Below are positions 8,731 through 36,498 of a stretch of 64,000 nucleotides of DNA, in pieces (within the stretch, counting starts at the first letter, position 1; the number at the start of each line of letters is the position of its first letter). The notes beneath the pieces are model-generated. The model ran no database searches and was not told the DNA's origin. It saw nothing but the letters and a program-made list of their open reading frames with translations. The DNA is taken from assembly GCF_964204865.1 (NCBI RefSeq), contig NC_135256.1, positions 12,834,001 to 12,898,000 of the forward strand. Direction: 5' to 3'. Origin of the DNA: Styela clava (lineage: Eukaryota). The position numbers and the translations under genes are program-made.

Positions 8731-8984
8731 GTAGTCCTATATATTTTTTCAAAATGAATCGCAAAAAATAGTTCAGTAGTAGTAATTATTATTATAAGTT
8801 CATATTTAAAATATATATTTCTTTTGTGTGAATTGGTTAGAAAGCGACTAGACGATTAAATTAGACGATTTCTCTTCTAAATCTATTGGCAGAGATAATT
8901 GAAACTTCAACGTGAAACACTCATCTCATCTATTGCTCCACGCACGTATATGAATTTGTATCTATTTTTTTCATTTTCTCATAG

Positions 8985-10864
8985 AGTCTGAACATATTGC
9001 TGAGAATGATCATGAGGGCCAAAAGTTTGGGACCAAACCCACAGCAATTGTCACTCCAACAAATAAATCACCTGTTAGGAGAACTTCGATTCGAAAAAAG
9101 AAAACATCATCTAAGCAAGAAAAACAGATCAAAGAGGTCAAATTTGACACTGACAAGACCGAAAAGTATATCTACGAACAGGCGAACCTTGAGACTGGTA
9201 GTCAGGAATCTTTATTAATAGATACGGATGTCAAGAAGGTACCAACTATTGTCATTGACGACAGCGATGTTGCATTGGAACTCGAGGACAAAATAAAAAA
9301 TTCTGACGATTCTGCAGAACTAGACAAGACTACAGATGAACCGGTCTCCTATGATGATAAGATCTATTCATCAAGTGCTACATTTGAAAATTTCCACAAT
9401 TCCATCGGAAAAGATATGCATAAACCAGACGAAAAAAATGAAGAAAACATCATTTCAGCTGATACACAAGGAAGCCCTAAAAGCGAGAAACCTGTCTCAG
9501 ATGAACCACTTACCGGCAAGAAAAAAATTCGAGTCGTGAAACGTAAAGGAAGTTCAAGAAGAAAACCAAGTCCTAAAATTACTGACGATAGCAGCCGTAA
9601 TACTCTCTTCAGCATGCCAGATGAAGAAAAGCCGGACCACGATAAATCAGACCTGAACAAAGAAACGGAGACTTTGCAGGATCAAGTGGAGGAAAATACC
9701 CACGGAGAGACTGATACTCCAATAGCTGAATTATCTTCCAAACCCGACGTTGTTGATATGGCTCCCATTGCTAAAAAGATACATGAAAATGTCCAGACAT
9801 CCTACTTAGCAGATCAAGACCCTGTTCAAGATCACAATGTAAAAGAATTAGTAGAAGAAACTGTGAAACCTTTGTTAAACTACGTCGACGAAATTGAAGT
9901 ACCAAAAGAGGAAAATGATAAGGAAGAATCTGTTTCTGAAATTGTACTCGACCAAATTAAGGATGTTCCAATAGCTGTTGATGTCTTCAAAACTGACACA
10001 AGTTATGTCGCCGAAGAAAAAATCGACGAACAGATCGCGAAAATATCAAAAGTTGAAAATGTAGCATTATTTGATGAAAAAGAAAACAAACAACAAGTCG
10101 AAGAACCTAATGTAGCTACAGAAGATAAAGGAAGCGTTAACCAAGATTTAACGGTAACGGTATTTGAAACCGTGAAACCAGTCGGAGCTATTGCTTTTGA
10201 TACATATGCTATAGCGGAGCAGGTGGATAAAAATAAAGATAACGAAGATACAAATGAAATGAACACCGACTTGGAACACCTGTCGGTCGATGAAAATAAA
10301 GAGAATAGGGACAAAAAAGAAACGAAAACGGACTTGGAAACTCAGATGGGAGATTTGTTGAGCTCAATGTCGGCTACATACGACTCTATGATGCCAAGTA
10401 TAGACAAAAAGGATCTTGATGAAGTTGTAGCTTCCCCCGAAAAGCATGAGTCACAGACTGAATCTATTGCCACCAAAGATTTTGCCTCATTAGAGAATAT
10501 ACAACAATATTCACCACAACAGGAAAATTTTAAGCTTTCACAAGATACAAACGGACAGGATATATCTGGTGAAACAATTGTGGGAAATTTGGTTGAGGAA
10601 GTGTTGAATACCACGGAGCCTATTGCGGCGGAAATCGAGGAGACATCTGAAGAAAAACCCACACATGACAAACCAAAGAAGAAAGTTGTCAAAAAAATTG
10701 TCAAGAAGAAAAAGGCAACAGATGAAGAACAAGGTTCACCAAAATCGGAGGGAGCTACAGGAAAAGAAAATGATGAAAATTCACCCAAAAATTTATCCAA
10801 ACTTTCGAGAACCAGAACCGTGCGAAAAAAGGTCGTAAGAAAACCACCCCCTCCTCAAACGTGA
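8985..10864 (+). CDS. Gene A terminal exon: acidic, low-complexity tail with polybasic clusters (whole protein about 732 aa)
   Basis: Polypyrimidine tract plus TAG acceptor (8982-8984), phase 1. The frame is open from 8985 into the 9275-10864 ORF, so the ORF track's TTG start is not the real start. E/D/K/T/S-rich, ending KKKVVKKIVKKKK...RTVRKKVVRKPPPPQT*. No C2 domain. Confidence 0.88.
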
Positions 10865-14827: not shown

Positions 14828-14940
14828 ATGGTATCTGAAAACATCGATCTTTCTTATCTGACGGTTGAAGAAAGGACAACGATTCTTAAAGTTCTAAACA
14901 GAGATGAGAAAATCAGAGAAACTGAGGAAAAAAGAGTCAA
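14828..14940 (+). CDS. Gene B coding exon 1: SHD1
   Basis: Acceptor CCTTGCAG (AG 14821-14822), ATG at 14828. Reads MVSENIDLSYLTVEERTTILKVLNRDEKIRETEEKRV, a near-canonical SHD1 (IDLSxLTxEExxxILKVLxRD). Phase-2 donor AA|GTATGA. A possible 5'UTR exon donor CAG|GTGAGA lies at 14057/14058. Confidence 0.92.
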
Positions 14941-16153: not shown

Positions 16154-16308
16154 AATACTTCGACGAAAGTCAGTGAACTTCGATAAAAAACAATTGACTT
16201 TTCTGAAAATATTTACTGGCGAATGGATAAAAGAGGTAGCAACAAGAGGCAAGAACTTCACTCTAGCAGCTAGTGGTCTCGTTAGGACACATCTCTTAAC
16301 AACAACCG
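16154..16308 (+). CDS. Gene B coding exon 2: SHD2 (155 nt)
   Basis: Acceptor TGCTTTAAG, phase 2 in, strong donor G|GTGAGT phase 1 out. Reads ILRRKSVNFDKKQLTFLKIFTGEWIKEVATRGKNFTLAASGLVRTHLLTTT with the TGEW motif. Same length and phases as gene A exon 2. Confidence 0.88.
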
Positions 16309-17117: not shown

Positions 17118-17168
17118 AAACAGTTACCACTGCACCGTTGGAAATCATAGAGACTACGACAGATATAA
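17118..17168 (+). CDS. Gene B coding exon 3 (51-nt phase 1-1 microexon)
   Basis: TCTGCAG acceptor and A|GTGAGA donor. Reads ETVTTAPLEIIETTTDI. Positional equivalent of the 57-nt microexon of gene A. Confidence 0.65.
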
Positions 17169-17603: not shown

Positions 17604-20600
17604 ACTACAAAAAATCCAATGATGCTTCAGATAAAGAGAAAATCAATACCACGATCCAAGAACAGTCCATCAACAGACCCAAGGACACTTCAGTAGTTGT
17701 TACCATAGACGTCAAAGGCAATGACGTGAAAATTACATCCAAAGTTGATACCACTGCACCCCAAACTTCTCAAATTGAAAATTTAGCCCAGGAAAAACAA
17801 CAAATAAGCTTCGACGAGCACATCGAAAAGAAACAGATAGCCGATAAGTCGTTCAGCGAAAGCGAAGAAAAAGGTTCTCCAAGTGCGAACGATCCCAAAG
17901 AAACATCTGAAATATCGAAAGAGTCTGAAACGCCACCAGAAAATCATTCGAATGAAGAAGATGATGATAAGGAAGGAAAAAGCAAAATCGCCGAATGGTT
18001 TTCAGACACGTTCTCCTCATGGAATATTGGGAAGGACAAAAAGGATGACGACCCCGATGAAGAGGCGAATGAAGAAACTATTGTACCAACAAACGTAAGC
18101 AATGAAAATGTACCGAAATCTGTTGGCGGAGACGAGAAAGAGACTAAAGATAAATTCGAAAACTTTGCGGACCTAATAAGCACTGAATTTGATTCGACTT
18201 TTGCCCGATTAGACGAAACTGTTGATAAAATCACCATAAAAGATTACGCAGAAAATGAGCCGGAGGTCGTTCCTGTCATTGTTCCATCCGAAGAGTATCA
18301 ACCAGATTTATTCGGAAGGTTACTCGCGCAACAAACTGATTACACACATACAACGGCGAAACAAGAACATATGCAGTATGAAAAAACACCCAATAAAATG
18401 AGTCACTTGGGTGATGAGTTCAACGACGCCGACGTTGACATATGTAGAAGTTTGGAAAGCATCACAGATGAACCGTGTGAGATTAACCTTTCAGATTTAC
18501 GCTCCGGAGATACAGTAGAAACGGAAGAAATTGTGTTATATGCAGCAACCAACGAAATATCTGCGACGACTACGCCATTTTTAGATGTTCATATTAGCAA
18601 TGTTATAGAAACCCAACAAACAATATCTGCAGAAAATTTGATTCTGTCTACTGATCAAGCAGAGGCAGACATAAACTCTCCAATTAAATCGGATAACGGT
18701 ACATTTTCATTTGAAAGCAAAAATACTGAATGGGTTGAAGACATTTCAACGTTTGAACATGTCACTGAAACTAATAGTGCGAATGTGTTAGAAAACGCTG
18801 ATTTGGCGAATGCTGACAGTATTTTTAGCAGTGATGGCCATAATGTCCAAACAACTCCTTATTTACCAATACCACTATACACCGATAATTTGGCTCCGAC
18901 AGGGTCAGTTTCAGATGATGGTTCATACGGAGATGATCCTCTTTCTCTTGTAGAATTTCTAGATTCCATACCATCAACAGATCAAAGCGAAGTGAAATTC
19001 GAAAACAAATTTGGCTTCGAAAAACAGTTATCTATTGACGAAATCACAAGTTCGCAATCGGTATTGAATGTGGTGGAAGATCTTCTGCACAATGTTGAAA
19101 AGTTGCAATTTGAAAGTGAGTTGGCCGATGAAATTTTGACTGAGGACAACGGTTCACAACTCACAAATCTCTTTATTAAAGACGAGGCCGATGATGACAA
19201 CATCAGCATTCCTGTGAAAGAAATATCGGAAAAGATGTCTTCAGACTCTGGTGATGTTCACGCTGTGAGTAATGTAATCGTTCATCCGAGCGAACAGGCA
19301 GGTGAAATAATTCAATCGCAAACCACAAATACATATAATGTAATTTCAGATTCGGCATTGAACCTTGCAGTCTCTCCATCTTCTGCCGAAAATAAAATCG
19401 CTGCACAATCAAAGGATCTAACATTGGATGAGTCAACTGAGCAAACCATTGACATAACGGATGTCGCTCAAGTACAGGAAGCATCCACCTCAGCGAACGT
19501 CAATGTATCTGCTGAACAAACAACAGTGATTCAATGTGACGATGATGGAAATGATTTATCATCCGAATACGACAACACAACAGCATATAATACATTTCCA
19601 CAATTTGCGATTCGTTCAGATGTAGATACATCAGAACAAAAGAAAATTGAAATCTATTCTCAAAAATCCAATGTTAAAGACATTCCACAAAACTATTTTC
19701 ACGATGATAACACCGACTCAGTATTACACAAAGAACACGATCCTGAACCAAGTTATGCTCCAGAAGATTATATCGACTCGACCGAAAAAATTCTTGAAAA
19801 ACAGATAGATATTACTAATATTGAAGCTTCGGCAATTTCTGAACAATCTCCACAAGGCTCAGTAGAAATACCGCTGCTTACGACTGAAGAAAGCAGCAGC
19901 TTAGTAATAACAGGTGAAACAATATTAGACCAAGATATCGAGGATTCCTCAAGTACAATTCCTAGCGAAAGCAACAGCCCTGATATGCCAACATACATGA
20001 AATTTACAGAATTCAGTGATATCACTATACCAGACACTGATTACAATGCTGGCTTTAAACCTCTATGCGAAGCAATAGAAGAAGAAGATGAAACTCAAAT
20101 AGAAGAATCTCCTATACAACCGAAAATTCCAACAATTTCTATATCAGACTATGACGAGGAGAAATACAGAGAATACAGTGAGCAGTTCGACAGTGATGAT
20201 TCTGAACTTTACATCAGCGAGGGGAATGATTATGAACAGTACTTTTATGATCAACAATACCATGTTGATGATGATGACACCATTCCACAATATTCAGATC
20301 CCAACAACGGCGGATTTGAATCCCATCCTGATGAGGAAGTCATCCTAGAGGAATCATATGATTACGGAGCTTCGGAAACTAGTTCACATACTATTACAGA
20401 TGTTCATGATGCAACTGGTGAAGTCAAAGATATGATAACAAATTACGAAACTCCCGGTAATCACGATTCTGATATGAGAATGAAAAGTGAATCCGATGAA
20501 GCATTAACAAGCACGAAAAAAATTGAAATTCCTGGAAGTGGACACAGAACAGAAGTGGAAAGTGATATTTCATATGATTTGCCGTTTGTAAATAACAATA

Positions 20601-23600
20601 CTGGAATTCTTGATGCTCAATCTGATGACCACAACATAGTGATAGACTCTGAAACACTAGATATAACTCTTACAAACGACGATGTCACTTTAACACCTAT
20701 CTCGCATGATACATTGTATAATGATACTGGATTAGTTGAACCTAATGTTTCCGAGATATCAGAAGGAACAAATGACGACATGGTAATATCAACTGAAATC
20801 ATTGATAAAGCGACATCAATAATAACAGACGCAATGTCCAAAGCTATGGAGAGTTTTCTCGATGCTGATCGAAATGCCGGTGTTCATAAGGATTCAGGGG
20901 ACATAGCACCATCCGATGGAAGCTATCAAGTCGTTACAATGTCGCTAAATAATGAAAATACCAACACACTGGACATTGCAAACAGTGAAGAAATTGGTAG
21001 GCCAGGTAATGACTTCAAATCTACGAATGAAAGCAGTGATCTCGAGGTTGTAGGTGGGGACATTCCAAGCTCTATACCTTTCGAAATACCGGAAGATATT
21101 TCTGATCTCAAAGAAATAGACATATTGACTAAGTCTGAAAACACAAATGAGGTACAAAAGTATACTGATCATTTTACTCTTGATGACGAAACTGGGAAAC
21201 AACGTGATGGTTCTATGACTGAGAACATTTACAGTCCGAGTCATAGACAAATTGAATTGATACAACAACTCGGGGCTGAGTTGGTTGAAACAGTAACGGA
21301 AGCTATCGAAGCACTTTCTGCTGAAGAATCTTCAGACGAACTTGCAGACGACAAACCAACTGATAAAACTCTAAGCACTGCAACAGATAAGTTTGTCAAT
21401 GAAAGAAAAGAATCACAATCTCCACCAAAAAGCAAAGAAATATACATGGAAAAAATACCTATTGCCAGAGAATCCGAATCTGCAAATGATTTGGACGTTG
21501 AAAACAAAAGAAATGATATATCCTATATTGAAGATGAGAATCAATCTGTATCTGAAAATTCCAAACCATTAGATGAGACAATTGACGATGAAGCAGAAAC
21601 AAGTGCAATGCCTATCTCTACAGCTGTCGTGTTAGATGATATTGCAGCAAAAATAGTATTAGAAGCGATTATGGAATCACCCCCTATTGGAACTATTCCT
21701 GATACGACCGATTCAACAGAATATTCCAATGAAGGGAATACATCTGAAACCCAAGAATTACATGATGTTCAAGCCGATGATCAAACTGTAAGTCATGTTT
21801 CGAAAGAAACAATACCTTCCAGCATATATGAAGATACCAAGCCAAACAAAGACAATTCTGACATTCCAGTCACTATGTTATCATCCTCCGAAGACGTGTA
21901 TCCATTATCTTCAGTTAACACACAAGAAACTACTGAAGACTATCATAAACCTAAATCCGGAGATAGCGTTACTATGAAAGAAAAAAAGTCAGTAAAGAAA
22001 ATAAAGAGTATAAAGATAAAGAAGTCAGGTCAAAGTATTAAAAGAAGTAAGATCTCCACAGATGCAGACATACAAACAACAACTAGTTCCGAAGACTTGT
22101 CTAATACTGAAAGAAAGTCAAGAGCATCGACGAAAAGAAAAGTTATAAAGAAAAAAACTGACGTTGCCGGTAAAATTAGCAAAGTGAAATCAAACGAAAA
22201 TAAAGAAGGACATGATATTGAAGCTGTGCAAAATCTTGAAGAAATTCAAGAGTCTATCGGTGAAAGTCAGCCGGCAGAAAGTTCAAACAGTGCGTCAGTT
22301 GATGCGCTAGGAGAGTCTCATATGGAGGAAAAACCGAATGATGTTGAAAAACAATCTTTGAATCTGGCTGGTGATATTGATCCAGATATACAAAACTCAG
22401 CCAGAGCACTTGAAAGTGATGAAATGCTTTCATTGGGGGATATATTGTTAGAACTGAGAATAAACAGTCTCTCTGATAAAACAAGAACTGTGTCTGATCC
22501 GATACGTATATGTGATTCTCCAGAATTGCGAAATAAAGTAACTCAAGCGGAAACTTCTGTTTTAGGTACAATGGCTGAAGATGATGGTTCCGCACACGTC
22601 GCCCCTGAAACAGGCATAAATACGGAAATGGGTGAAAGAAAAGAGACAGATGGCATGCTTGCCTTTTCTGGTGAAACTTATGATCTTCAACAAGAAACAA
22701 TCGAAGATACGGCTGCGGAATTGCAATCAAACACATTGCATGACGCTACGTCTGAGAAAGATTCAGATGAAATATCTGCGAGTAAATCCATCGAATCAGA
22801 CGAAGTTACTTTCATATCCGACACCGAAGGTTCACTTCCAGTGTTGCAAAAGACAGAAACTAAAAAGGAAGAAGATATAAATAAGCACGACATCGATAAT
22901 GAGTTTGTCGCACAAGATGCCGAAAATGTCGAAAGAAACGAGACGGAACATGAAATGTTTCACATGCAATCAATACCCGAGGAACCTGATAGCCAGGATG
23001 AAAATGCTGCTGCGTCAATACCTCAAGATTTACAATACAGTGAACACCCCGTGCTTGCTCCGATTAAAGAGGAAGAGGCCGACGAAATATATAAGTCAGA
23101 ATATAGTGACGCATCGAGTTCCATAACGGAGATCACAAAAGATACAATTTTATCTGTGACCTCAGTGAATTTAGAAAACGAACCCTCATCCCATATAGAC
23201 TCAGCAGACAGAGATACTTTGCACTCTGCAATTAATATGAGGGAATTAATTGATGATGAGGATGACAAACTTTCACTTTTTGACATCCTGGCAGAACTTA
23301 ACTATGAAGCAAATCCAATGACTGGGGACTTGCAAGATACAGAAAATCCAATTTTTTTGTCACAAACTGAGGAAAAGAGTGGTGAAAGGAAAGTTTGGTA
23401 TTCGGAAGAGAAATCTACTCATTTGTCCGCGGAAGAAAAGGATACGACCTCTGTCGTGTCTGAATACGACAATGACATTACCAGTCAAAAATTACATATC
23501 GCCGAACAAGAAGAAATAAAGTTTGCACCTCAAGATGTAAACGTCAATACAACACACGATGGATCAGACGACATAATAAAATCACCTCTAAGTACAATGT

Positions 23601-26600
23601 GCGAAGGCGAAATAGATGGAACGTCGCAAAGGCTGGAAGAAGATATACCATTGGTCGAAAAGGTAGATGACTTCACTGGTAATGTAACAGACATTAGTCA
23701 ATCCATTCACAAAGACACCAGGGGTGTCGAAGAAAATACCGCATACCAAGAAAGCATGGGTTTTGATTACGATGCTGTCTTATCAGCTGAGTTAAATACC
23801 CAAGCTAATGATGGTGAGATTTCAAATTTAGCTGCTACGAAGAATCTCGATAGTACCAATGCAAATATGGAACAAAATACCGACTTTGAGAAAACTGAAC
23901 CGATTATTTCCGCTGGTTATCAACAAGAATTGGTAAAGGGAGTGGAAACCAATTTAAAAATGGGAACTGTCAGCCTTGAAAATGAAACTGCAAACTTAAC
24001 TCATACAGAAACATATGGCAGTAATGGTGCAGAAAAAAATTTTGTTAAAGATTTTAAAAACTCAGACGAAAATATCTCTATTAACGAGGAAGTCGAGGAA
24101 ACAGTCGTTGAGAGTAGCTTTACTCCAGTTGGAATTGATATCAACGAAACACACGAAAATGCAGACACGCTTTCGACGGACTATTCGAGTAGCGATCGAA
24201 AGCATGGCGAAAGGGTAGAAATTGATACTACACTTCCTGAGGTGTTGCCAATAGAACACGAACATGAGGACGACGTACACGCTCAAGATAGCTCAAATGA
24301 AGAAGGTATATATGGCAATGAAACCATAAATAATGAAAACAAAAATAATGATGGGCTAAAGGCAGCTAGCACTGAAAATGTAAATCAAGACCTCGCACTA
24401 TCTGTTGAAGAGGCAGTTGAGAATATTACTGGCCATGCTGAGGAAGATTCAAGCAAAAATCACGTGCACGTCAAAAATGTTGATATTGATACAACATTTT
24501 CTGAAGAATCGTCATTAAAAGACAGAGATTTACAAGCATATCTTAGCTCCAAGGAAGAACATGCAAGTGGCGAGCAAGAACCTAATGTTGTCATAATCAT
24601 GAAAACTGAAATGCTACTTGATAGCACTAAAGAACCCAATTTAGAAAAAGGTAATGTGGATTTGGAAAAAGAGAATGGAAGCCTAGAACGTGTTGATCTG
24701 GATAAAAATTCCAATGTCAATGCCAACCAAAATCTTCACGAAGACATTCAGATTTCCACAGAAAATATAATACCTCTCAAAATAACGAAGGAAACAAAAG
24801 ACGAAGATGATTTCACCAAACTGTCAGTGATTAACCAATCAACAAGTGAAAACATTGTCACTCAATCAATGCTATATTCAAGTAACGATCAAAATGACCG
24901 TGAACATAGAGATGTTGATACAGCGGATTCAAGTAATGAGCAAATACAAGTCGAACATATAGAAATTGAAGCAAATGTTTCCCAGGAGTTGCCAATAGAG
25001 CTGCAACATGATACTGGTATGCAAACACAATTTGGCTCCAATGAAGACCGCATAAGTGCCGGGGAAGAAACTGTTGTTGCCCAAAATATTAAAACGGAGA
25101 CAACCACTGATACTACAAAATCTGAACGGAAGAGTAAAAAAGTTGTTAAGAAAATTAAAAAACCGTCAGAAGATAACAAAAAGTCGGAATCGTCAATTAA
25201 AAAAGTCTCTGTTCGACGTAAAGTTGTTAAGAAGCCCAACGTTGCAATTAAACTGACAGATGCTGATCAAGGAGTAACTGAAATTGATGTTCCGGGTGAT
25301 GTTCCAAATCAACAAGAGTTGGCAAACGTGACAGAACCTGATTTGGCGAAAAAACCTGTTGATATGGACAACGAGATTGAAAACAAAACACATGTTGAGC
25401 TAGAAACATATAATACCGAGCAAGAAAAATCTTTGTCTGATGAAGTCATTAAAGACAAAGAGTTGATAAAAGATGGAGAAGCTGATTTGGAGATGAGTTC
25501 TGTTGACCTGAACAATGTGACTGATAACAAAACGCACGATCAGCTGCAAACATATCGCACTGATGATGTTAATCAAAATCTAGGCCAAGACTTTAATATT
25601 TCAGAGGAGTCTGCCGCGCCTCAGGATGTAAAGGATGAAGCAAAATTTGACGACAATTCTACCATAACCACAGTTGTTAACGACGAATCAAATGGAACCG
25701 TTACCGCATATTCGTTAGGTGAATCAAGTAATGACCTAATGCAAGTTGAACAAGACAAAACTGATACAAAAGTTTTCGAAGAGTTGCCGATAAATTCGCA
25801 AGATGATACGGACTTGCAAGCACAATTTGGCTCCAATGAAGATAGCATAAGCGCCGGGGAAGAAACTGCTGTTGCCCAAAATATTGAAACTGAGACAACC
25901 ATTGATACCACAAAATCTGAACGAAAAAGTAAAAAAGTTGTTAAGAAAATTAAAAAACCGTCAGAAGATAACAAAAATTCAGAATCACCAATTAAAAAAG
26001 TCTCTGTTCGAAGTAAGGTTGTTAAGAAACCAAACGTTGCAAATAAACTGACAGAAGAGAAGGTTGACAAAACTTATAATGAAAAAGATGCTGATCACGA
26101 AGAAACTGAAATTGTTGTTCCGGATGATGTTCCAAATCAACAAGAGTTGGCAAACGTGACAGAACCCGATTTGATGATAAAACCTGTTGATATGAACAAC
26201 GAGATTGAGAACAGAACACATGCTGAGCTAGAAACATATAATACTGAGAATACCATCCAAGAAAAACCTTTGTCCGATGAAATCATAAAAGACAAAGAGT
26301 TGATGAAAGATGCAGAAGCTGATTTGAAGATGAGTTCTGTTGACCTGAACAATGTGACTGATAACAAAACGCACGATCAGCTACAAACATATCGCACTGA
26401 TGATGTTAATCAAAATCTTGGCCAAGACTTCAATATTTTAGAGGAGTCTGCCGCGCCTCAGGATGTAAAGGATGAAACAAAATTTGACGACAATTCTACC
26501 ATAACCACAGTTGTTAACGACGAATCACATGAAAACGTTACCACATATTCGTTAGGTGAATCAAGTAATGACCTAATGCAAGTTGAACAAGACAAAGCTG

Positions 26601-29600
26601 ATACAAAAGTTTCCGAAGAGTTGCCGATAAATCCGCAAGATGATACAGACTTGCAAGCACAATTTGGCTCCAATGAAGATCGCATAAGCGCCGGGGAAGA
26701 TACTGCTGCTGCCCAAAATATTGAAAATGAGACAACCATTGATACCACAAAATCTGAACGGAAAAGTAAAAAAGTTGTTAAGAAAATTAAAAAACCGTCA
26801 GAAGATAACAAAAAGTTGGAATCATCAATTAAAAAAGTCTCTGTTCGACGTAAGGTTGTTAAGAAACCAAACGTTGCAAATAAAATGACAGAAGACAATG
26901 TTGATAAAACTTATAATGAAAAAGATGCTGATCAAGAAGAAACTGAAATTGTTGTTCCGGATGATGTTCCAAATCAACAAGAGTTGGCAAACGTGACAGA
27001 ACCCGATTTGGCAATTAAACTTGTTGATATGGATAACGAGATTGAGAACAAAACACATGTTGAGCTAGAAACATTTAATACTGACAATACAGACCAAGAA
27101 AAACCCTTGCTCGGTGAAGTCACAAAAGACAAAGAGTTGATAAAAGATGCAGAAGCTGATTTGAAGATGAGTTCTGTTGATCTGAACAATGTGACCGATA
27201 ACAAAGCGAACGATCAGCTACAAACATATCGCACTGATGATTTTAATCAAAATGTTGGCCAAGACTTCAATATCTCAGAGGAGTCTGCCGCGCCTCAGGA
27301 TGAAAAGGATGAAACAAAAATTCACGACAATTCTACCGTAGCCACGGTTGTTAACGACGAATCAAATGAAAACGTTACCGCCTATTCGATAGGTGAATCA
27401 AGTAATGAGCAAATGCAAGTTGAACCCATAGAAGTTGATGCAAAAGTTTCCGATGAGTTGCCGAAAGAACCGCAAGATAATACCGACTTGCAAGCACAAT
27501 TTGGCTCCGATGAAGATTGCATAAGCGCCGGGGAAGAGACTGCTACTGCCCAAAATATTAAAACTGAGACAACCATTGATACCACAAAATCTAAACGGAA
27601 AAGTAAAAAAGTTGTTAAGAAAATTAAAAAACCGTCAGAAGAAAACAAAAAGTTGGACTCACCAATCAAAAAAGTCTCTGTTCGACGTAAGGTTGTTAAG
27701 AAACCAAACGTTGCAAATAAACTGACAGAAGACGAGATTGACAAAACTTATAATGAAAAAGATGCTGATCAAAAAGAAACTGAAATTGTTGTTCCGGATG
27801 ATGTTCCAAATCAGCAAGAGTTGACAAACGTGACAGAACCCGATTTGGCGATAAAACCTGTTGATATGGACAACGAGATTGAAAACAAAACACATGTTGA
27901 GCTAGAAACATATAATACCGAGCAAGAAAAATCTTTGTCTGATGAAGTCATTAAAGACAAAGAGTTGATAAAAGATGAAGAAGCTGATTTGGAGATGAGT
28001 TCTGTTGACCTGAACAATGTGACTGATAACAAAACGCACGATCAGCTGCAAACATATCGCACTGATGATGTTAATCAAAATCTAGGCCAAGACCTTATTA
28101 TTTCAGAGGAGTCTGCCGCGCCTCAGGATGTAAAGGATGAAGCAAAATTTGACGACAATTCTACGATAACCACAGTTGTTAACGACGAATCAAATGGAAC
28201 CGTTACCGCATCTTCGTTAGGTGAATCAAGTAATGACCTAATGCAAGTTGAACAAGACAAAACTGATACAAAAGTTTTCGAAGAGTTGCCGATAAATTCG
28301 CAAGATGATACGGACTTGCAAGCACAATTTGGCTCCAATGAAGATAGCATAAGCGCCGGGGAAGAAACTGCTGTTGCCCAAAATATTGAAACTGAGACAA
28401 CCATTGATACCACAAAATCTGAACGAAAAAGTAAAAAAGTTGTTAAGAAAATTAAAAAACCGTCAGAAGATAACAAAAAGTCAGAATCCCCAATTAAAAA
28501 AGTCTCTGTTCGACGTAAGGTTGTTAAGAAACCAAACGTTGCAAATAAACTGACAGAAGAGAAGGTTGACAAAACTTATAATGAAAAAGATGCTGATCAC
28601 GAAGAAACTGAAATTGTTGTTCCGGATGATGTTCCAAATCAACAAGAAGTGGCAAACGTGACAGAACCCGATTTGATGATAAAACCTGTTGATATGGACA
28701 ACGAGATTGAGAACAGAACACATGCTGAGCTAGAAACATATAATACTGAGAATACCATTCAAGAAAAACCTTTGTCCGATGAAATCATAAAAGACAAAGA
28801 GTTGATGAAAGATGCAGAAGCTGATTTGAAGATGAGTTCTGTTGACCTGAACAATGTGACTGATAACAAAACGCACGATCAGCTACGCACATATCGCACT
28901 GATGATGTTAATCAAAATCTTGGCCAAGACTTCAATATTTTAGAGGAGTCTGCCGCGCCTCAGGATGTAAAGGATGAAACAAAATTTGACGACAATTCTA
29001 CCATAACCACAGTTGTTAACGACGAATCAAATGAAAACGTTACCACATATTCGTTAGGTGAATCAAGTAATGACCTAATGCAAGTTGAACAAGACAAAGC
29101 TGATACAAAAGTTTTCGAAGAGTTGCCGATAAATCCGCAAGATGATACAGACTTGCAAGCACAATTTGGCTCCAATGAAGATCGCATAAGCGCCGGGGAA
29201 GATACTGCTGTTGCCCAAAATATTGAAAATGAGACAACCATTGATACCACAAAATCTGAACGGAAAAGTAAAAAAGTTGTTAAGAAAATTAAAAAACCGT
29301 CAGAAGATAACAAAAAGTTGGAATCATCGATTAAAAAAGTCTCTGTTCGACGTAAGGTTGTTAAGAAACCAAACGTTGCAAATAAAATGACAGAAGACAA
29401 TGTTGATAAAACTTATAATGAAAAAGATGCTGATCAAGAAGAAACTGAAATTGTTGTTCCGGATGATGTTCCAAATCAACAAGAGTTGGCAAACGTGACA
29501 GAACCCGATTTGGCAATTAAACTTGTTGATATGGATAACGAGATTGAGAACAAAACACATGTTGAGCTAGAAACATTTAATACTGACAATACAGACCAAG

Positions 29601-32600
29601 AAAAACCCTTGTCCGGTGAAGTCACAAAAGACAAAGAGTTGATAAAAGATGCAAAAGCTGATTTGAAGATGAGTTCTGTTCATCTGAACAATGCGACCGA
29701 TAACAAAGCGAACGATCAGCTACAAAGATATCGCACTGATGATTTTTATCAAAATGTTGGCCAAGTCTTCAATATCTCAGAGGAGTCTGCCGCGCCTCAG
29801 GATGAAACAAAAATTCACGACAGTTCTACCGTAGCCACGGTTGTTAACGACGAATCAAATGAAAACGTTACCGCCTATTCGATAGGTGAATCAAGTAATG
29901 AGCAAATGCAAGTTGAACCCATAGAAGTTGATGCAAAAGTTTCCGATGAGTTGCCGGAAGAACCGCAAGATAATACCGACTTGCAAGCACAATTTGGCTC
30001 CGATGAAGATTGCATAAGTGCCGGGGAAGAGACTGCTACTGCCCAAAATATTAAAACTGAGACAACCATTGATACCACAAAATCTAAACGGAAAAGTAAA
30101 AAAGTTGTTAAGAAAATTAAAAAACCGTCAGAAGAAAACAAAAAGTCGGACTCACCAATCAAAAAAGTCTCTGTTCGACGTAAGGTTGTTAAGAAACCAA
30201 ACGTTGCAAATAAACTGACAGAAGACGAGATTGACAAAACTTATAATGAAAAAGATGCTGATCAAAAAGAAACTGAAATTGTTGTTCCGGATGATGTTCC
30301 AAATCAGCAAGAGTTGACAAACGTGACAGAACCCGATTTGGCGATAAAACCTGTTGATATGGACAACGAGATTGAAAACAAAACACATGTTGAGCTAGAA
30401 ACATATAATACTGACAATACAGACCAAGAAAAACCCTTGTCCGATGAAGTCACAAAAGACAAAGAGGTGATAAAAGATGCAGAAGATGATTTGAAGATGA
30501 GTCCTGTTGATCTGAACAATGTGACTGATAACAAAGCGCACGATCAGCTACAAACATATCGCACTGGTGATCTTAATGAAAATCTTGGACAAGACTTCAA
30601 TATCTCAAAGGAGACTGGCGCGCCTCAGGATGTAAAGAATGAAACAAAAATTGACTACAATTCTCCCGTAACCACAGTTGTTAACGACGAATCAAATGAA
30701 AACCTCACCGCATATTCGATAGGAGAATCAATTAAGGACCGAATGCAAGTTGAACATATAGAAATTGATGCAAAAGTTTCCGAAGAGTTGCCGATAGAAC
30801 CGCAAGATGATACAAACTTGCAAGCACGATTTGGCTCCGATGAAGATCGCATAAGCGCCGGGGAAGAGACTGCTGTTGCCCAAAATATTAAAAATGAGAC
30901 AACCATTGATATCACAAAATCTGAACGGAAAAGTAAAAAAGTTGTTAAGAAAATTAAAAAACCATCAGAAGATAACAAAAATATGGACTCACCAGTTAAA
31001 AAGGTTTCTGTTCGACGTAAGGTTGTTAAAAAGCCCAACGTTGCAATTAAACTAGGTGAAGACGAGGTTGTTAAAAGTAATAAGAAACAAGGGGGCGATG
31101 GTGAGGAAGCCAAAAATATCATCTCCGATGAGGCTCAGAATCAACATAAGTTGATAAACGTTGCAGAAATCAATTTGGAAATGCAGTCTGTTGATACGGA
31201 CAACGAGATTGAAAACAAAACACACATTGAGCCAGAAACATATTACACTGACAATGTCATTTTGAATCTTAGCCAAGATTTACAAAACCCCCAAAAATAT
31301 GCCTTGCTTGGTGAAGTAATTGATGAACCAAAAACAAAAGATAGATTAACCGAAACTGCGGCCACGATGGTCGAAACAAGCGATAACGTCACCGCCCAGA
31401 TTATGGAAGTTACAAGTAGTAATCAAATGCATGTAGAAAATGACACAATAGGGTCTGGGGAGTTGGCGATAAAACTTCAAGACGATAAGGATGTGCTAAC
31501 TCAAGTTGTATCTGCCGAAGAACGTACAGGTGACGAGCAAGAGATTGCTGACGCCAATAATATTGAAAGTGAAGCAAACATTGATACTACAAAATCTGGA
31601 CGGAAGAGTAGAAAAGTTGTGAAGAAAATTAAAAAACCATTAGAAGGTGACAAAAAATCGGATTCACCCCATAAGAAGATTTCCGTTAGGCGTAAAGCAA
31701 CAAAGAAACAAGGCGATGAAGTGAAAATTGCAGAAGACGAAGTTGCTACGGGTAATGCGGAAAATCAAGATGACCAAGAAAACTCTGAAACTACTATTTC
31801 TGATAAAGTGCAAAATCACGAAGAGTTGAATAAAGATGCAGGAACCGGATTGAAGAACGCTTTTGTTGACGTGGATAATGCGACTGATAACAAAGCATTT
31901 GATCAGCTCCAAACATATCTTACTGGGGATGACAATCAAAATCTTGTCCAGGACTCTGATATCACAAAGAAGTATGCCGTGCCCCAGGATGCAACGGGTG
32001 GCACAGAAATTGACGATAATTCAACCATAACCATAGTTACAGCAAATGAAAATGTTATCGCATATTCGACAAATGATTCAAGTAACGACCAAATGCAAGT
32101 AGAACAAATAAAATTCGATGCAATAGTATCCGAGGAGTTCCCGATGGAACTCCAAGGCGATATGGATGTAAAAGCACAAATTGTCTCAACTGCTGAAGAC
32201 CGCGTAGGCGGCGTGCAAGAGACTGCTGTTACCGAAGGTATTAATAAAGAGACTACCATTGAAATCATAAAACCTGATCGGAAGAGTAAAAAAGTTGTAA
32301 AGAAAATTAAAAAGCCAATGAATAATGACAATAAGTCTGATAACCCACCGAAAAAAATTTCGATTAGGCGCAAGATTATTAAGAAGCCAAAAGACACAGA
32401 GGACCCTAGTGAAGATGTGTCTGACATAATAGGTACAGAACAACAAACTATTGATGAAACTGAAAAAATGGCCCACACTGACATTCAAACTCCACAACAT
32501 GAGTTGTTGAAAGTTTCAGAAGGCAATTTACAAATAGATGCATCAGATCTAACTACAGACAATGAAAATAAAATAGACATTGATCAACAAGAACATAAAA

Positions 32601-33397
32601 GAGATGATCAAAATAATCACGATGATTTCCCAATGTCACCAGAACACGTTTTGCCTGATGAAGTACCCGATGATAAAAACGTCGTGATGAATCGCACTCA
32701 AAATTTAGACAAAGAAGAACAAGAAACGAATCAATCCTCGAATTTAAAAGCCGATCTACCGGACGGTGAAGAAGATATTGTTGCCGCAAACGAATCACTT
32801 CCCGAAACACTCAATTTGGAAAGTACCGCGAACGAACTACAAGCTACTGATGTTCACATAAATTTGACAGAAAAATCAGACAATTTGGAACTTGATGGAA
32901 CAGATCTAGATCCGTTGGCGACTGCCCAACTGCACGACGCCCATAGCACCAAGAAAATTGTCAAAAAAACGAAAACACTTTCCACAGCCGGGGAGAGTTT
33001 AAAAAAACCATCCATCAGGCGAAAGGTCATCAAGAAGAAAGAAAAATCAAACAAAGAAGTTTCTCAAGATGGCGAAATTGAAACTAGCAAAGAAAACCCC
33101 AAAGGGTCATCCGGAAATAAGGAGGGAGAGTATCTTATGGAAGAAATTGATTCCGGAACTAAAGCGTCAGTGCCTGTTGCAACAAGCTGTAATTTAACTC
33201 TAGAAACTACTTCTTCTAATCTAACCATGACGGAAGATGGAGGGGACATTGCTGAAGCAAAGCCATCTAAAAAAAGCATAAAGGTATTGAAGAAATCGGT
33301 GAAAAAAGACCTGGACGAAAAGGATTCGAACAAAGACGATTCCCCAACACCAAAGAAAAGTTCCACTCGCCGAAAAGTCGTAAAGCGCACAAAATAA
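17604..33397 (+). CDS. Gene B giant terminal exon (about 15.8 kb): acidic, probably disordered region with tandem repeats (whole protein about 5370 aa)
   Basis: Uninterrupted 5266-codon ORF with no ATG at its start. Phase-1 acceptor AAG at 17601-17603 with branch-like CTAAC at 17578; an alternative phase-1 CAG lies at 17628-17630. Repeat-unit length differences are all multiples of 3. Confidence 0.9.
24920..32560 (+). repeat. Coding tandem array of about 10 units (675-837 bp) with a 2.5-kb higher-order duplication
   Basis: The KKVVKKIKKP anchor recurs at 25142, 25937, 26774, 27611, 28439, 29276, 30104, 30941, 31616 and 32294 (spacings 795, 837, 837, 828, 837, 828, 837, 675, 678). Units 2-4 match units 5-7 at offsets 2502, 2502 and 2493. 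Confidence 0.95.
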
Positions 33398-33401
33398 TAA
33401 A
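33396..33401 (+). terminator. AATAAA overlapping the stop codon of the giant exon
   Basis: Sequence AAA TAA TAA AAC; the hexamer shares bases with the stop codon at 33395-33397. Confidence 0.3.
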
Positions 33402-33736: not shown

Positions 33737-36498
33737 ATATGGTGAGAGGTGTAGCCGGTTTAGCAACTGACACATCCACTTCTATAGTGGCGGGTGCCGT
33801 TGGTGGTGTGGCAACTGTGGTCACCGGTATTGCGGAGACGGGAACACTTGCTGGTACTGGTGGAGCTGAGATTTTGGTGACTGGCGTGATGCGCACAGAT
33901 ATTATGTCAGACGGAGTCGTTGTAGAGGAATCTGCATTAGAAGCAGACATCGCGACAGTCAACGTTGATCAAGCCAGCACAGAAAGTGAGAAATATATTG
34001 TTGTTAAGCCGGCGAAAAAACGAATAAAAAAGAGCGTTCAGAATACAATTCACCAGAAAGAAGTCATAACTCCACAAACACAAGTATTAAAGAAAAAAAT
34101 CATCGTTGAAGATAATCTTGCAGAAAGCAAACCTCAAGTAGATTTGGTTAAAAAAGAAATTGTGATTCAGAATTTCATTCCATGCGAACCCAAAGTCCAA
34201 ATATTGGCAGAAAAAGAAATTTTGATTCAAAGGCCTTCAACACAAAAGCCAGCAATAACTATAGAAAGTGTCGCTGTTCAGATTGATGAAAACCCGATTA
34301 CACAAGACGGATATGAATGTGCTGAAGAGATTCTAATCAGGCAGGATGTAGTTTCGATCTCTGATTCTCAATCGGGGTCATTCTCATCAGAAGATAATCA
34401 GAGTTGTGATTCTCAATATGAAGTTTTGATTCAAGATGAGATTCTCTCTCACGCTGTGGATGAAAAACAAATATCAGAACAAAACCCTTTGGCTTTTAAA
34501 GAAGCAACAATTCAGATTGATAAGCAGATTATTTGTGACAGCGAAGACGATGCAGAACATGAAGAAATTTTGGTTTATGAGCAATTTACTTCGAATTCTG
34601 AATGCCAATCAGAAGATTCTTCTATTGGTATCCAGGTTCAGGATAATAATGCCTTTCAGTCAACCACGGAATTAGTTTCGGAAACTCAAGAGCAGACTAT
34701 GCAAGCGGGTGAAATACGGAAAGCAGTACAAGATATTATGATAACGTCGAAGGAAGCCACTAATGCAGCTCAGATCGATGTTCAGGAAATTGATGTTAAT
34801 TTCAACTCCAGCTCAAAGAAGAAAACTGGCATTGCAGGGTCGGCAGTTGGTATTATTGGAAACGTTTTCTCGTCTGCCAAGAATATATCTGTAGGTAAAC
34901 ATGCTGCAAAGATTGTAAATGGCGCCAAGGAAACAGTTGTCGGATTGATTCCTAGTGTTACTCCGCATGACGTGATCATATCAGCTTTTGATAATGAAGC
35001 CATCGTAGAGGTTGACAACAGTAGTAGTGGAACTAATATTGTTGAAGTTGTAAGTAGCACTACAAGGCTGCCTACAAGACTTTTCGAAATCGCAAACATT
35101 GGAGGAATTGTTGAAGGTGGGTCAAATATTGTGAATGCTGCTGTGACCGGGCCTGTTGAAATTACCAGCGGCGTAGTCGACGTAGTTGGAGTTGGGGGTG
35201 TGATCGAAAGTGGAAGGAACGTCGTTGGGAGAATTACAGAAGGTGGATCAAATATTTTACATGCTGCTGTGACCGGACCTGTTGAAATTACAAGCGGAGT
35301 AGTCGACGTAGTTGGAATTGGGGGTGTGATCGAAAGTGGGGGAAACTTGGTTGAATTCGCAACGGACACTGTAGGCGTAACCGATGGCATTAATAGCGTT
35401 GTTGAAATGGCAAGTATTGAAAGAGTCGTCGGCACTGGAGGAGATATTGTGGATGTCGTTGTTGATACCATTAATATTTCGGGTGATGGCATTGAAAGAA
35501 CAGAAATAGTGGAAGAAGTGATTGTTGATAGGGATTCCGAGCCAATTCAAATGCAACAAAATCTTGTAGCTTCTGCTGCACATAGAAAAGTAATAAAGAA
35601 AGCGAAAAAGGCTGGACAATTTCCTCCAGAAGAGCAAAGAGACATTGTGATACAAGAAAATCCGAACACACAAATCGGACAAGTTGTGGATCTCATAAAG
35701 CTACAAGACCAGGTAACAGTTGGTAAACAAATCAGCTCAGATGGTAAAGCAGTAACTGAAACCAAACAAATTTCACGAGACGTGGAACCATTGATTGCAA
35801 AAAATACTGAGGTCGTTAAAATTATACAAAAAGCACCAATGAAAACACAAAACGTTAGCCAGGGTGAAAAGAGAAAGAAAATTGTAAAAGCGGTACAAAA
35901 GCAAGATGCTCTGGTAACAATAAAAGAAAAGGGCAGTAAGGAACCGAACGAAAAAACGACACAGGTGAAAGCGATGCCGGTTCAAAAACAGAGCGTAAAG
36001 CGTAAAGTAGTAAAGAAAATTACCAAGAAAGTCAATCCCACAAAAGTCGTTGAAACAGCTACACAGCAAGAGTCCAAGATTATTCCAAAAGTTGTTATTC
36101 CTCTGGTCGATCAAAAAGTTATACCCGGTTCGAAAATAGTCCAAGGTAAAGTTCTATCAACTAAGGTAGTTACATTTGATGAGGATTTCCAAAGGAAAAT
36201 GGATGATGCTGAAATGGATAGACTGGAACGAATCGCCCAATCACAAGAAGTAGGTCAGACTTCTAAAGAAGTACAGCAACCAGCGGATGGCATCAAGTTG
36301 ACCCAAGAATCTCTCGTGGAAGAACTTGTAAGTCACGACGTTCAAGATGTCGTTTCTCAGATGTGGGATATGCTAGACGACGACTCTAATCAACAAGGAG
36401 AACAAAATATAGCTCAGACACAAACTGCAAAAAAATTGACAAAAGTAGTCAAAGTTGCTAAAAGCTCCATACCACAGCAAGCTGTCCACGTGAAGTAA
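33737..36498 (+). CDS. 2.76-kb coding exon: probable alternative terminal exon of gene B (isoform about 1026 aa), or a separate single-exon gene from ATG 33739
   Basis: 926-codon ORF. Strong acceptor TCTTTTTTCAG (33734-33736) with TTAAC upstream, in phase 1 like the gene B donors. Shares the KKVVKK-type basic motif (KRKVVKKITKK, RKVIKKAKK) with both other tails. V/G/E/Q/K-rich, with no recognisable folded domain. Confidence 0.8.
35113..35358 (+). repeat. 126-bp (42-aa) coding tandem duplication
   Basis: EGGSNI..AAVTGPVEITSGVVDVVG.GGVIESG.N starts at 35113 and again at 35239. Confidence 0.9.

What the first reader, a model, noticed from the sequence alone, without database searches (positions are those of the whole stretch)
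17604..33397. Single coding exon of about 15.8 kb encoding about 5260 probably disordered residues
Seen: a stop-free ORF of this length in AT-rich DNA, dominated by E/D/S/T/N/K, with few Trp or Cys and no evident folded domain. Known: coding exons this large are rare; AHNAK, titin and mucins are examples. AHNAK likewise joins a small N-terminal interaction domain to one giant repeat exon. Inference: a convergent AHNAK-like design on a Rab-binding head, possibly a very long entropic tether or spacer around vesicles.
Basis: partly seen in the sequence, partly recalled or inferred. Interest (0 to 1): 0.78.

Follow-up and report, generated by a model that had tools for sequence, protein, structure and literature searches.

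The report
Giant disordered tail on Rab-effector head
A sea-squirt gene joins a small vesicle-GTPase-binding head to about 5,260 floppy residues written in one 15.8-kb exon, an extreme form of a design already known from the human gene EXPH5.

Summary
Window 17604-33397 is one stop-free coding exon (5,263 whole codons; chance about 1e-167). It is the last coding exon of Styela clava LOC120327732, which NCBI lists as uncharacterised (isoforms of 5,370 and 5,361 aa). Three small upstream exons encode a Slp-homology domain (SHD1+SHD2) with no zinc finger. It resembles the Rab27-binding domain of Slp2-a and melanophilin, so the "Rab-binding head" is supported by similarity, below Pfam's cut-off. 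No C2 or other domain was found.

The tail looks disordered by charge-hydropathy and by two low-confidence AlphaFold fragments. It has no detectable relative outside this species. It is not a featureless spacer. Its 3' half is a nested repeat array found only at this locus, and 13 conserved polybasic modules punctuate a chain with net charge -622.

The closest known design is exophilin-5/Slac2-b (SHD head, huge last exon), not AHNAK. I read it as a C2-less Rab27-effector-type linker with many polybasic contact sites; that function is inferred.

A smaller paralogue lies just upstream in the window. Other first-stage notes cover this same stretch, none on other DNA.

The parts
14828..14940 (+). 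Exon 1 of LOC120327732: start codon and the SHD1 helix (37 whole codons plus 2 bases; donor GT at 14941)
   Evidence: Translation equals residues 1-37 of both NCBI isoforms. Pfam FYVE_2/RabBD 18.2 bits, E 0.0029, below the 27.2 cut-off. A profile of 7 S. clava SHD1 exons hits Slp2-a at E 4.3e-07.
16154..16308 (+). Exon 2: linker and SHD2 (TGEW motif); no cysteines, so no zinc finger
   Evidence: Whole codons 16155-16307 equal residues 39-89. The PDB alignment to the 59-residue Slp2-a Rab27-binding chain 3bc1_B runs through this exon to residue 67.
17118..17168 (+). Exon 3: 17-residue T-rich linker, phase 1 at both ends
   Evidence: Translation of 17117-17167 equals residues 90-106.
17604..33397 (+). 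Exon 4, the giant terminal coding exon (15,794 nt with stop); alternative acceptor with the exon starting at 17631
   Evidence: X1 and X2 differ only by the 9 residues between the two acceptors.
17604..23917 (+). Non-repetitive acidic part of the tail (about 2,100 aa), with a few isolated predicted helices and a twice-occurring LSLxDILxEL motif (nt 22427 and 23270)
   Evidence: No relative in 1.84 billion representatives for ORF aa 801-2000 except the species' own older model.
23918..25138 (+). Degenerate older repeat copies leading into the array
   Evidence: Own-genome search with one unit gives 33-63% identical partial matches at window 23918-24352, 24596-24922 and 24893-25138.
25139..33127 (+). 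Array of 10 units (265-279 aa; U8 and U9 are 225-226 aa), each a 39-aa polybasic block plus an acidic spacer of 186-240 aa. U1-U3 and U4-U6 are a recently duplicated three-unit block. Each full unit holds a 48-51-aa sub-repeat.
   Evidence: Nucleotide identity U1/U4 97.0%, U2/U5 98.6%, U3/U6 98.6%, U8 and U9 about 70% to the rest, U10 about 53%. Charges per block. Sub-repeat spacing.
21983..33394 (+). 13 polybasic modules (KSxRKSKKVVKKIKKP ... KKVSVRRKVVKKP type). The first is at 21983-22156, ten lie in the array, and the last two are at 32999-33058 and 33353-33394.
   Evidence: 15 clusters with at least 8 K/R in 14 residues group into 13 modules, spaced 225-281 aa within the array. 15 of the 19 invariant columns of the unit alignment lie in the first 32 residues of the unit. 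pN/pS is 0.31 in the block.
33396..33401 (+). AATAAA overlapping the double stop TAATAA: a possible poly(A) signal giving a very short 3' UTR
   Evidence: Read from the sequence. Its use is not tested.
6239..10864 (+). Upstream tandem paralogue (gene A). Exons are about 6239-6345 (SHD1), 7888-8042 (SHD2-like, TGDW) and 8985-10864 (626-aa acidic tail ending in the same polybasic motif).
   Evidence: It has the same phase-2 intron after SHD1 as the giant gene.
33737..36498 (+). Third large open exon (ORF C, about 920 codons) 340 nt after the giant exon. It has a phase-1 acceptor compatible with the exon 3 donor, an ATG 2 nt inside the exon, and the same polybasic motif at two sites.
   Evidence: No protein of 509-1,620 aa in the 5.8-billion collection matches it. 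Its relation to the giant gene is undecided.

Best explanation
The exon is the tail of a C2-less member of the synaptotagmin-like (Slp/Slac2, exophilin) family of Rab27/Rab3-type effectors in the ascidian Styela clava. Shown or well supported: a roughly 90-residue head made of SHD1 and SHD2 helices without zinc fingers, followed by about 5,260 residues with no detectable fold. Inferred: the head docks on a GTP-bound Rab27/Rab3-type GTPase on secretory vesicles. The tail is an extended, highly acidic chain (net charge -622) that carries 13 short, proline-capped polybasic modules at intervals of about 225-280 residues. I propose that these act as many weak contact sites for acidic partners: F-actin or microtubules, as the positively charged patch of melanophilin does, or acidic membranes, replacing the C2 domains of true Slps. 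The protein would then hold or cluster vesicles on the cortex or cytoskeleton over distances of roughly a hundred nanometres (my estimate). The array grew by recent tandem duplication and differs between the two assembly versions, so its length is probably not tightly fixed.
For: Gene model. The exon-by-exon translations match NCBI XP_077970289.1 and XP_039250012.2.

Head.
- phmmer against PDB: the top 7 of 7 hits are Slp2-a or melanophilin Rab27-binding domains. The best is 3bc1_B, E 0.0021, covering SHD1 and SHD2.
- Pfam FYVE_2/RabBD is the top hit for the head (20.9 bits). It is also the top hit for exon 1 of this gene and of the paralogue separately.
- A profile of 7 SHD1 exons from this genome hits Slp2-a at 4.3e-07, melanophilin at 1.2e-3 and rabphilin-3A at 0.021; these are the top 8 of 10 hits.
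- The residues aligned with melanophilin D25 and R35, both needed for RAB27A binding (PMC9120966, passages), are D and R here.
- The Atlas top cluster is 'RabBD domain-containing protein', score 0.83 (a lead only).

No C2 or other domain was found.

Disorder.
- 26 of 26 windows of 200 aa fall on the disordered side of the charge-hydropathy line.
- AlphaFold2 on one unit with a 10-row alignment gives pLDDT 44.2 and no secondary structure.
- AlphaFold2 on ORF aa 1041-1960 gives pLDDT 36.2, with 882 of 920 residues below 50 and only 5 isolated helices.

Modules.
- They are invariant across units while the spacers drift.
- The motif is enriched in all three neighbouring tails; 0 of 500 shuffles reach the observed counts.
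- Melanophilin's actin binding depends on a positively charged C-terminal patch, which that preprint proposes is exposed by flanking prolines (bioRxiv 10.1101/2020.03.11.987495, passages).

The frame is kept in a second, 95%-identical model of 5,008 aa. In its non-repeat part the indels are runs of 1, 3, 9 and 8 residues.
Against: - The head scores below Pfam's gathering cut-off (20.9 against 27.2 bits).
- Gene B's exon 1 alone is only E 3.66 in the genome-wide family scan.
- No binding to any Rab is shown, and SHD-type domains differ in Rab preference.
No holder run is on record as RNA.
- The tail matches nothing known, including no myosin- or actin-binding domain of Slac2-a/c.
- No classical trafficking motif is enriched: NPF, DPF/W, clathrin box, SxIP and LIR are all at or below shuffle expectation.
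- Constraint on the spacers is weak. dN/dS is 0.39-0.62 for old unit pairs and up to 1.37 for young ones. There are 110 mismatches over 2,596 aa between the two assembly versions.
- The polybasic modules also look like nuclear localisation signals.
- The AlphaFold runs had one row or 10 paralogous rows, so low confidence is weak evidence of disorder.
Confidence: 0.5

Rival explanations
1. The head is a working Rab-effector domain, but most of the tail is evolutionary ballast. On this reading it is a fast-evolving, nearly neutral low-complexity expansion kept open only because a frameshift would remove a few C-terminal or periodic motifs, and its length has no function of its own.
For: - The tail is an orphan.
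- The repeat unit occurs nowhere else in the 377-Mb genome: 15 of 15 matches lie inside this exon.
- The three-unit block duplication is very recent, 97-98.6% identical.
- The unit complement differs between the two assembly versions.
- dN/dS is near 1 for several young pairs.
- About 4% of residues differ in the unique part between versions.
Against: A 15.8-kb frame with no stop needs continuing selection. Old unit pairs have dN/dS of 0.39-0.62. The smaller paralogue shows that a 626-aa tail is enough to carry the motif, so the extra length was at least tolerated repeatedly.
Confidence: 0.25
2. It is a nuclear or nucleolar acidic-basic scaffold of the nucleolin/Nopp140 type (comparison recalled). 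The polybasic modules would be bipartite nuclear localisation signals, and the head similarity would be incidental.
For: Strongly acidic stretches alternate with K/R-rich blocks of the KRKSKK...RRKVVKK type. PKA-type basophilic sites are enriched through the repeats, 26 against 10.4 +- 3.1 in shuffles.
Against: The head similarity is specific: only Rab27/Rab3 effectors lead the PDB lists. It is shared with a neighbouring paralogue that has the same intron position. No RNA-binding or nucleolar domain was found.
Confidence: 0.08
3. The annotated single-exon product is not what the cell makes. Internal splicing (exitrons) or alternative last exons would give much shorter proteins, for example head plus ORF C, and the giant isoform would be rare or absent.
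For: No RNA evidence could be obtained here. ORF C has a phase-1 acceptor compatible with the exon 3 donor. All head donors and tail acceptors of the two genes and ORF C are phase 1.
Against: The open frame over 5,263 codons cannot be explained unless the whole exon is translated at least sometimes. NCBI predicts only full-length forms for this gene among the proteins found. No 509-1,620-aa protein containing ORF C exists in the collection.
Confidence: 0.12

Closest known systems
Exophilin-5 / Slac2-b (EXPH5), vertebrate Rab27B effector
   Same: An N-terminal Slp-homology (Rab27-binding) head and no C2 domains. Nearly all of the protein is encoded by one very large last exon: all six reported mutations, from c.1395 to c.5786, lie in exon 6 (PMC4695416, passages).
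   Different: The Styela tail is about 2.7 times longer (human protein length of about 1,989 aa is recalled). It is strongly acidic, half of it is a young tandem repeat array, and it carries 13 polybasic modules. No tail similarity to anything outside S. clava was detectable for ORF aa 801-2000. Orthology was not tested directly because no EXPH5 sequence was available from a tool.
Slp2-a and melanophilin (Slac2-a) Rab27-binding domains (PDB 3BC1, 2ZET)
   Same: The SHD1 helix and the SHD2 (S/T)GxW motif are aligned. As in the 59-residue Slp2-a chain, SHD1 and SHD2 are adjacent with no zinc finger. Melanophilin also has a basic C-terminal patch that binds actin.
   Different: Slp2-a has two C2 domains and melanophilin has myosin-Va-binding regions (PMC11189624, abstract in the search listing). 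None of these was detected here. Similarity of the head is weak, 14-21 bits for the single sequence.
AHNAK
   Same: A small N-terminal interaction domain plus a giant repeat-rich region in one huge exon, and a link to exocytic vesicles (recalled, not from a call).
   Different: No PDZ domain, no 128-aa AHNAK-type repeats and no sequence similarity. It is an analogy only.
Piccolo / Bassoon, giant presynaptic scaffolds
   Same: Proteins of about 400-550 kDa, largely disordered, with N-terminal rabphilin/RIM-like elements, large central exons and a role in vesicle clustering (all recalled).
   Different: They carry zinc fingers, and Piccolo also has PDZ and C2 domains. None is present here. There is no sequence relation.

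Membership tests
Slp/Slac2 (exophilin) Rab27-effector family | SHD1 helix with the conserved L-T-x-E-E ... I-L-x-V-L-x-R-D ... E-x-x-R pattern | tested here: met
   Aligned to Slp2-a and melanophilin. A profile of 7 S. clava SHD1 exons, including this one, hits Slp2-a at E 4.3e-07.
Slp/Slac2 (exophilin) Rab27-effector family | SHD2 with the (S/T)GxW motif after SHD1 | tested here: met
   TGEW in exon 2 aligns with SGQW of 3bc1_B. The paralogue has TGDW.
Slp/Slac2 (exophilin) Rab27-effector family | Residues equivalent to melanophilin D25 and R35, needed for RAB27A binding | tested here: met
   D and R stand at the aligned positions. Their role in MLPH comes from PMC9120966 passages.
Slp/Slac2 (exophilin) Rab27-effector family | Pfam PF02318 (FYVE_2/RabBD) at or above its gathering score | tested here: not met
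   20.9 bits against 27.2. Only profile positions 2-36 of 118 match, because the zinc-finger part of the model is absent from this protein.
Slp/Slac2 (exophilin) Rab27-effector family | Binding to GTP-bound Rab27 or a related Rab | not testable with these tools
   Needs a pull-down or two-hybrid assay.
Slp subfamily (Slp1-5) | Tandem C-terminal C2 domains | tested here: not met
   No C2 or any other Pfam family in the giant exon or in ORF C. The protein is therefore of the C2-less (Slac2) type.
EXPH5 / Slac2-b orthologue | Architecture: an SHD head followed by a long tail in one giant last exon | tested here: met
   Exon map. EXPH5 exon 6 span from PMC4695416 passages.
EXPH5 / Slac2-b orthologue | Sequence similarity of the tail, or a head closest to EXPH5 | tested here: inconclusive
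   ORF aa 801-2000 has no relative in 1.84 billion representatives beyond the species' own model. The head was not compared with EXPH5 because no EXPH5 sequence came from a tool.
AHNAK | N-terminal PDZ domain and 128-aa central repeats | tested here: not met
   No PDZ hit. The units are 265-279 aa and unrelated to anything known.
A-kinase anchoring proteins | Amphipathic RII-binding helix | tested here: inconclusive
   There is one good-looking site at ORF aa 1344-1361. The pattern count, however, is 5 against 3.5 +- 1.9 in shuffles, and there is no Pfam hit.

The most novel reading that the evidence does not exclude
An ascidian-specific giant vesicle scaffold, playing the part that Piccolo and Bassoon play in vertebrates. 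A Rab27/Rab3-docking head would sit on a blocky polyampholyte of about 590 kDa. Its 13 basic modules and acidic spacers would drive multivalent self-association or cytoskeleton binding, so that secretory vesicles are clustered or held at a distance. The locus may also be modular: two heads and three tails (626 aa, 5,263 aa and about 920 aa) all join in phase 1, which would allow tails to be exchanged by alternative splicing.
Probability: 0.1. Interest if true: 0.75.

Novelty: new variant of a known kind. Interest (0 to 1): 0.42.

Why it matters
From recall, a 15.8-kb coding exon is among the largest known in animals. It gives an uncharacterised NCBI gene a testable identity: a Rab27-effector-type protein whose tail is several times longer than any described family member that I know of (recalled). 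Three features make it a natural system for asking whether length and charge patterning of a disordered tether matter for vesicle positioning. It has strictly conserved polybasic modules, freely drifting acidic spacers, and a repeat number that differs between the two assembly versions. It also shows that the EXPH5-style design (small SHD head, one giant last exon) occurs outside vertebrates.

Tried and rejected
- AKAP idea. Three amphipathic helices in ORF aa 1073-1361 looked like PKA-anchoring helices. The RII-binding pattern is not enriched, 5 hits against 3.5 +- 1.9 in 200 shuffles, and Pfam finds nothing. I dropped it to a side note.
- Classical trafficking motifs. NPF, DPF/W, FxDxF, clathrin box, SxIP, WxxF, LIR, FFAT-like, DLL, KEN and RGD show no enrichment.
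- Homology of the three neighbouring tails. BLASTP of A vs B, C vs B and A vs C gave no hit at E<=0.01, with or without SEG. Only the short polybasic motif is shared.
- Pfam and PDB searches with a single polybasic module and three other short segments found nothing.
- Relatives of the tail or of a giant with this head. Region 1-2400 of the exon among proteins of 2,896-9,215 aa gave only the two S. clava models. The head among proteins of 2,949-9,382 aa gave only the same two, out of 168 candidates. ORF aa 801-2000 against 1.84 billion representatives gave one hit, the older S. clava model. These searches do not cover head-only relatives of ordinary length.
- Literature. 'LOC120327732' found 0 papers. 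'Styela clava' plus 'Rab27' found 0 papers. Supplementary files were not consulted and might hold expression tables for this gene. McGrath et al. 2012 (PMC3516608) is not held.
- TRF with a period limit of 500 missed the roughly 840-nt unit. The array was defined with anchors and MAFFT instead.
Full report
**Observation.** The window holds a + strand ORF at 17597-33397 of 5,266 codons. The open frame begins at 17582, and the window has no N runs. With the exon's own composition (A 39%, T 23%), the chance of 5,263 codons without a stop is about 1e-167, and the other five frames carry 140-706 stops. E, D, S, K, T and N make up 2,971 of 5,272 residues; Trp occurs 4 times and Cys 9 times.

**Identity of the gene.** A search with residues 1-2400 of the ORF found two proteins, both from the ascidian Styela clava. 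One is 'uncharacterized protein LOC120327732 isoform X2' (5,361 aa, 100% identical). The other is an older version of the same accession (5,008 aa, 95% identical). Isoform X1 has 5,370 aa. Translating exon by exon and comparing with these models gives this map:
- Exon 1: 14828-14940.
- Exon 2: 16154-16308.
- Exon 3: 17118-17168.
- Exon 4: from 17604 (X1) or 17631 (X2) to the stop at 33395-33397.

X1 and X2 differ only by the 9 residues between the two acceptors. The giant exon is therefore the last coding exon. An AATAAA at 33396-33401 overlaps the double stop. The window is contig 8, 12,834,001-12,898,000, of a 377-Mb assembly.

**The head.** I used residues 1-130 of the NCBI model.
- The best Pfam hit is PF02318 (FYVE_2, the rabphilin/Slp Rab-binding domain) at 20.9 bits. 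This is below the 27.2 cut-off and covers only the first 35 of 118 profile positions.
- Against PDB sequences, all 7 hits are Rab27-binding domains of Slp2-a or melanophilin. The best is the 59-residue Slp2-a chain 3bc1_B (E 0.0021), aligned across both SHD1 and the SHD2 motif (TGEW against SGQW).
- There are no cysteines between the two helices, so the zinc fingers of melanophilin and rabphilin are absent.
- Exon 1 alone gives the same Pfam family (18.2 bits).
- The genome holds at least six other SHD1-like exons, 41-54% identical. One of them is in this window.
- A profile of seven such exons hits Slp2-a at 4.3e-07, melanophilin at 1.2e-3 and rabphilin-3A at 0.021.
- The positions aligned with melanophilin D25 and R35 are D and R here. 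Substitutions at these positions reduce RAB27A binding (PMC9120966, passages).
- The protein-atlas look-up put a 'RabBD domain-containing protein' cluster first, at score 0.83, which is only a lead.

The 'Rab-binding head' is thus well supported as a homology statement. It is untested as biochemistry.

**The tail: no fold found.**
- Pfam finds nothing real in the exon. The single hit is 18 bits against a cut-off of 27.
- All 26 windows of 200 aa lie on the disordered side of the Uversky charge-hydropathy boundary. Net charge is -622.
- AlphaFold2 on one repeat unit with the ten units as alignment gave mean pLDDT 44.2 and pTM 0.10. No secondary structure was called, and 242 of 279 residues were below 50.
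- AlphaFold2 on ORF residues 1041-1960 without an alignment gave pLDDT 36.2, with 882 of 920 residues below 50. It called five isolated helices, at about ORF 1066-1094, 1216-1241, 1258-1270, 1352-1355 and 1894-1900.

Only 1,199 of 5,263 residues were folded, and the inputs were shallow. This agrees with disorder but does not prove it.

**The tail: not featureless.**
- From about window 23918 the exon becomes a repeat array. Degenerate copies come first, followed by ten units anchored on KVVKKIKKP, with spacings of 265, 279, 279, 276, 279, 276, 279, 225 and 226 residues.
- Units 1-3 and 4-6 are a duplicated three-unit block (97.0, 98.6 and 98.6% nucleotide identity). Unit 7 is 90-92% identical to these, units 8 and 9 about 70%, and unit 10 about 53%.
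- Each full unit contains a 48-51-residue internal duplication. Units 8 and 9 each keep only one copy of it.
- This confirms the nested repeat noted by another first-stage note on the same stretch.
- The unit occurs nowhere else in the genome: 15 of 15 matches lie inside this exon.
- Each unit is a 39-residue block of net charge +11 to +15 followed by a spacer of 186-240 residues with net charge -26 to -46.
- Counting clusters of at least 8 K/R in 14 residues gives 15 clusters in 13 modules. One is in the unique part (ORF 1463-1520), ten are in the array and two are near the C-terminus, the last ending the protein.
- Fifteen of the 19 invariant alignment columns lie in the first 32 residues of the unit.
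- Over pairs that involve the old units 8-10, the block has pN/pS 0.31 at pS 0.50. Whole units have dN/dS of 0.39-0.62 for old pairs and 0.45-1.37 for young ones.

Selection is therefore concentrated on the polybasic modules.

**Variation.** The older model (XP_039250012.1) has nine anchors instead of ten. It lacks the second three-unit block and has two units that the current assembly lacks. In the non-repeat part it differs at 110 positions over 2,596 aa, plus four indels of 1, 3, 9 and 8 residues. The C-terminal 368 residues differ at 12 positions with no gaps. Whether this is haplotype difference or assembly error in the older version cannot be told from proteins alone.

**Relatives.** Nothing outside S. 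clava was found for three queries:
- Exon residues 1-2400 among proteins of 2,896-9,215 aa.
- ORF residues 801-2000 against 1.84 billion cluster representatives read in full by HMMER.
- The head among proteins of 2,949-9,382 aa, where 2 of 168 candidates scored and both were self.

The tail is an orphan at the sensitivity of these tools.

**Neighbourhood.**
- A paralogue lies about 8 kb upstream. It has an SHD1 exon from the ATG at 6239, an SHD2-like exon at 7888-8042 (TGDW), and a 626-codon acidic tail exon at 8985-10864 that ends in ...RKKVVRKPPPPQT.
- Its SHD1 exon independently gives Pfam FYVE_2 (15.8 bits) and Slp2-a in PDB.
- The intron after SHD1 has the same position and phase 2 in both genes.
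- A third open exon of about 920 codons begins 340 nt after the giant exon's stop, at a good acceptor (33737), with an ATG two bases inside.
- All head donors (gene A exon 2; gene B exons 2 and 3) and all three tail acceptors are phase 1.
- The three tails are not alignable. All carry the [KR][KR][KR]?[VI][VI][KR][KR] motif far above chance, with 5, 33 and 3 overlapping hits against shuffle means of 0.01 or less; 0 of 500 shuffles reach them.
- No protein of 509-1,620 aa matches the third exon. Whether it is an alternative tail, a separate or trans-spliced gene, or unannotated remains open.

**Expression.** This is the weak point.
- The look-up of sequencing runs listed 15 runs, and none is on record as RNA.
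- Nine runs are guessed to be RNA. They have 54-79 million letters of contigs and hold 8-59% of the sampled words of 17000-23000; five of them hold 38-59%.
- Four genome-sized runs hold 83-86%.
- Two runs of other organisms hold none.
- The shares in the small runs exceed what random DNA sampling of a 377-Mb genome would give, which hints at transcription but is not proof.

**Mechanism.**
- Shown: the architecture, the charge pattern, and the conservation of the modules.
- Inferred from family knowledge: SHD heads dock on GTP-Rab27 or related Rabs on secretory organelles (PMC9120966, passages). C2-less members use their tails to reach the cytoskeleton. Melanophilin binds actin through a positively charged C-terminal patch, and that preprint proposes the patch is exposed by flanking prolines (bioRxiv 10.1101/2020.03.11.987495, passages). 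The Styela blocks likewise end in proline (KKIKKP, VVKKP).
- My reading: the protein is a Rab-anchored, very long, self-repelling acidic chain with 13 weak basic contact sites for actin, microtubules or acidic membrane. It would hold or cluster vesicles.
- The main rival is that most of the length is tolerated ballast.

**Comparison and verdict.** The nearest known design is exophilin-5/Slac2-b, a Rab27B effector. All six of its described mutations, between c.1395 and c.5786, lie in a single exon 6 (PMC4695416, passages). AHNAK, titin and the mucins (recalled) share only the giant-exon property. The gene is already in NCBI as a predicted uncharacterised protein. I found no paper naming it. I file it as a new variant of a known kind: an extreme, repeat-expanded, polybasic-studded C2-less Slp homologue.

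Noticed in passing
window 6239-10864 (+): A smaller tandem paralogue: an SHD1 exon, an SHD2-like exon (TGDW) and a 626-codon acidic tail ending in the same polybasic motif. It has the same phase-2 intron after SHD1 as the giant gene.
   Followed up: partly
window 33737-36498 (+): A third open exon of about 920 codons, 340 nt after the giant exon's stop. It is V/I/G-rich and holds a 126-nt tandem repeat at 35113-35339 (1.8 copies). It has a phase-1 acceptor compatible with exon 3, an ATG 2 nt inside, and two polybasic motif sites. No matching protein of 509-1,620 aa exists in the 5.8-billion collection.
   Followed up: partly
window about 100-1370; also L001: A dispersed repeat of about 1.27 kb. 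At least 43 matches at 87-97% identity lie on many contigs of the genome. It is probably a young transposable element or MITE-like family.
   Followed up: no
window 22427-22456 and 23270-23299: The motif LSLxDILxEL, preceded by an acidic run, occurs twice in the unique part of the tail (0 of 200 shuffles; the pattern was chosen post hoc). AlphaFold calls a short helix on the second copy.
   Followed up: partly
window 21626-21680: VVLDDIAAKIVLEAIMES looks like an AKAP-type PKA-anchoring helix. The pattern is not enriched in the protein (5 hits against 3.5 expected).
   Followed up: partly
window 33396-33401: AATAAA overlaps the double stop codon TAATAA of the giant exon, which would give an unusually short 3' UTR if it is used.
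   Followed up: no
G000 C1:20943840-20946452, C9:13559532-13563180, C3:1231077-1231656, C3:4189067-4189174, C10:15394438-15394533, C16:536207-536311: Other RabBD/SHD1-bearing loci of the genome. The C1 locus scores 48 bits, above Pfam's cut-off, and sits in a 1,039-codon open frame. Four of the five fetched SHD1 exons end at the same position as in the two genes of this window, which suggests a conserved intron.
   Followed up: partly
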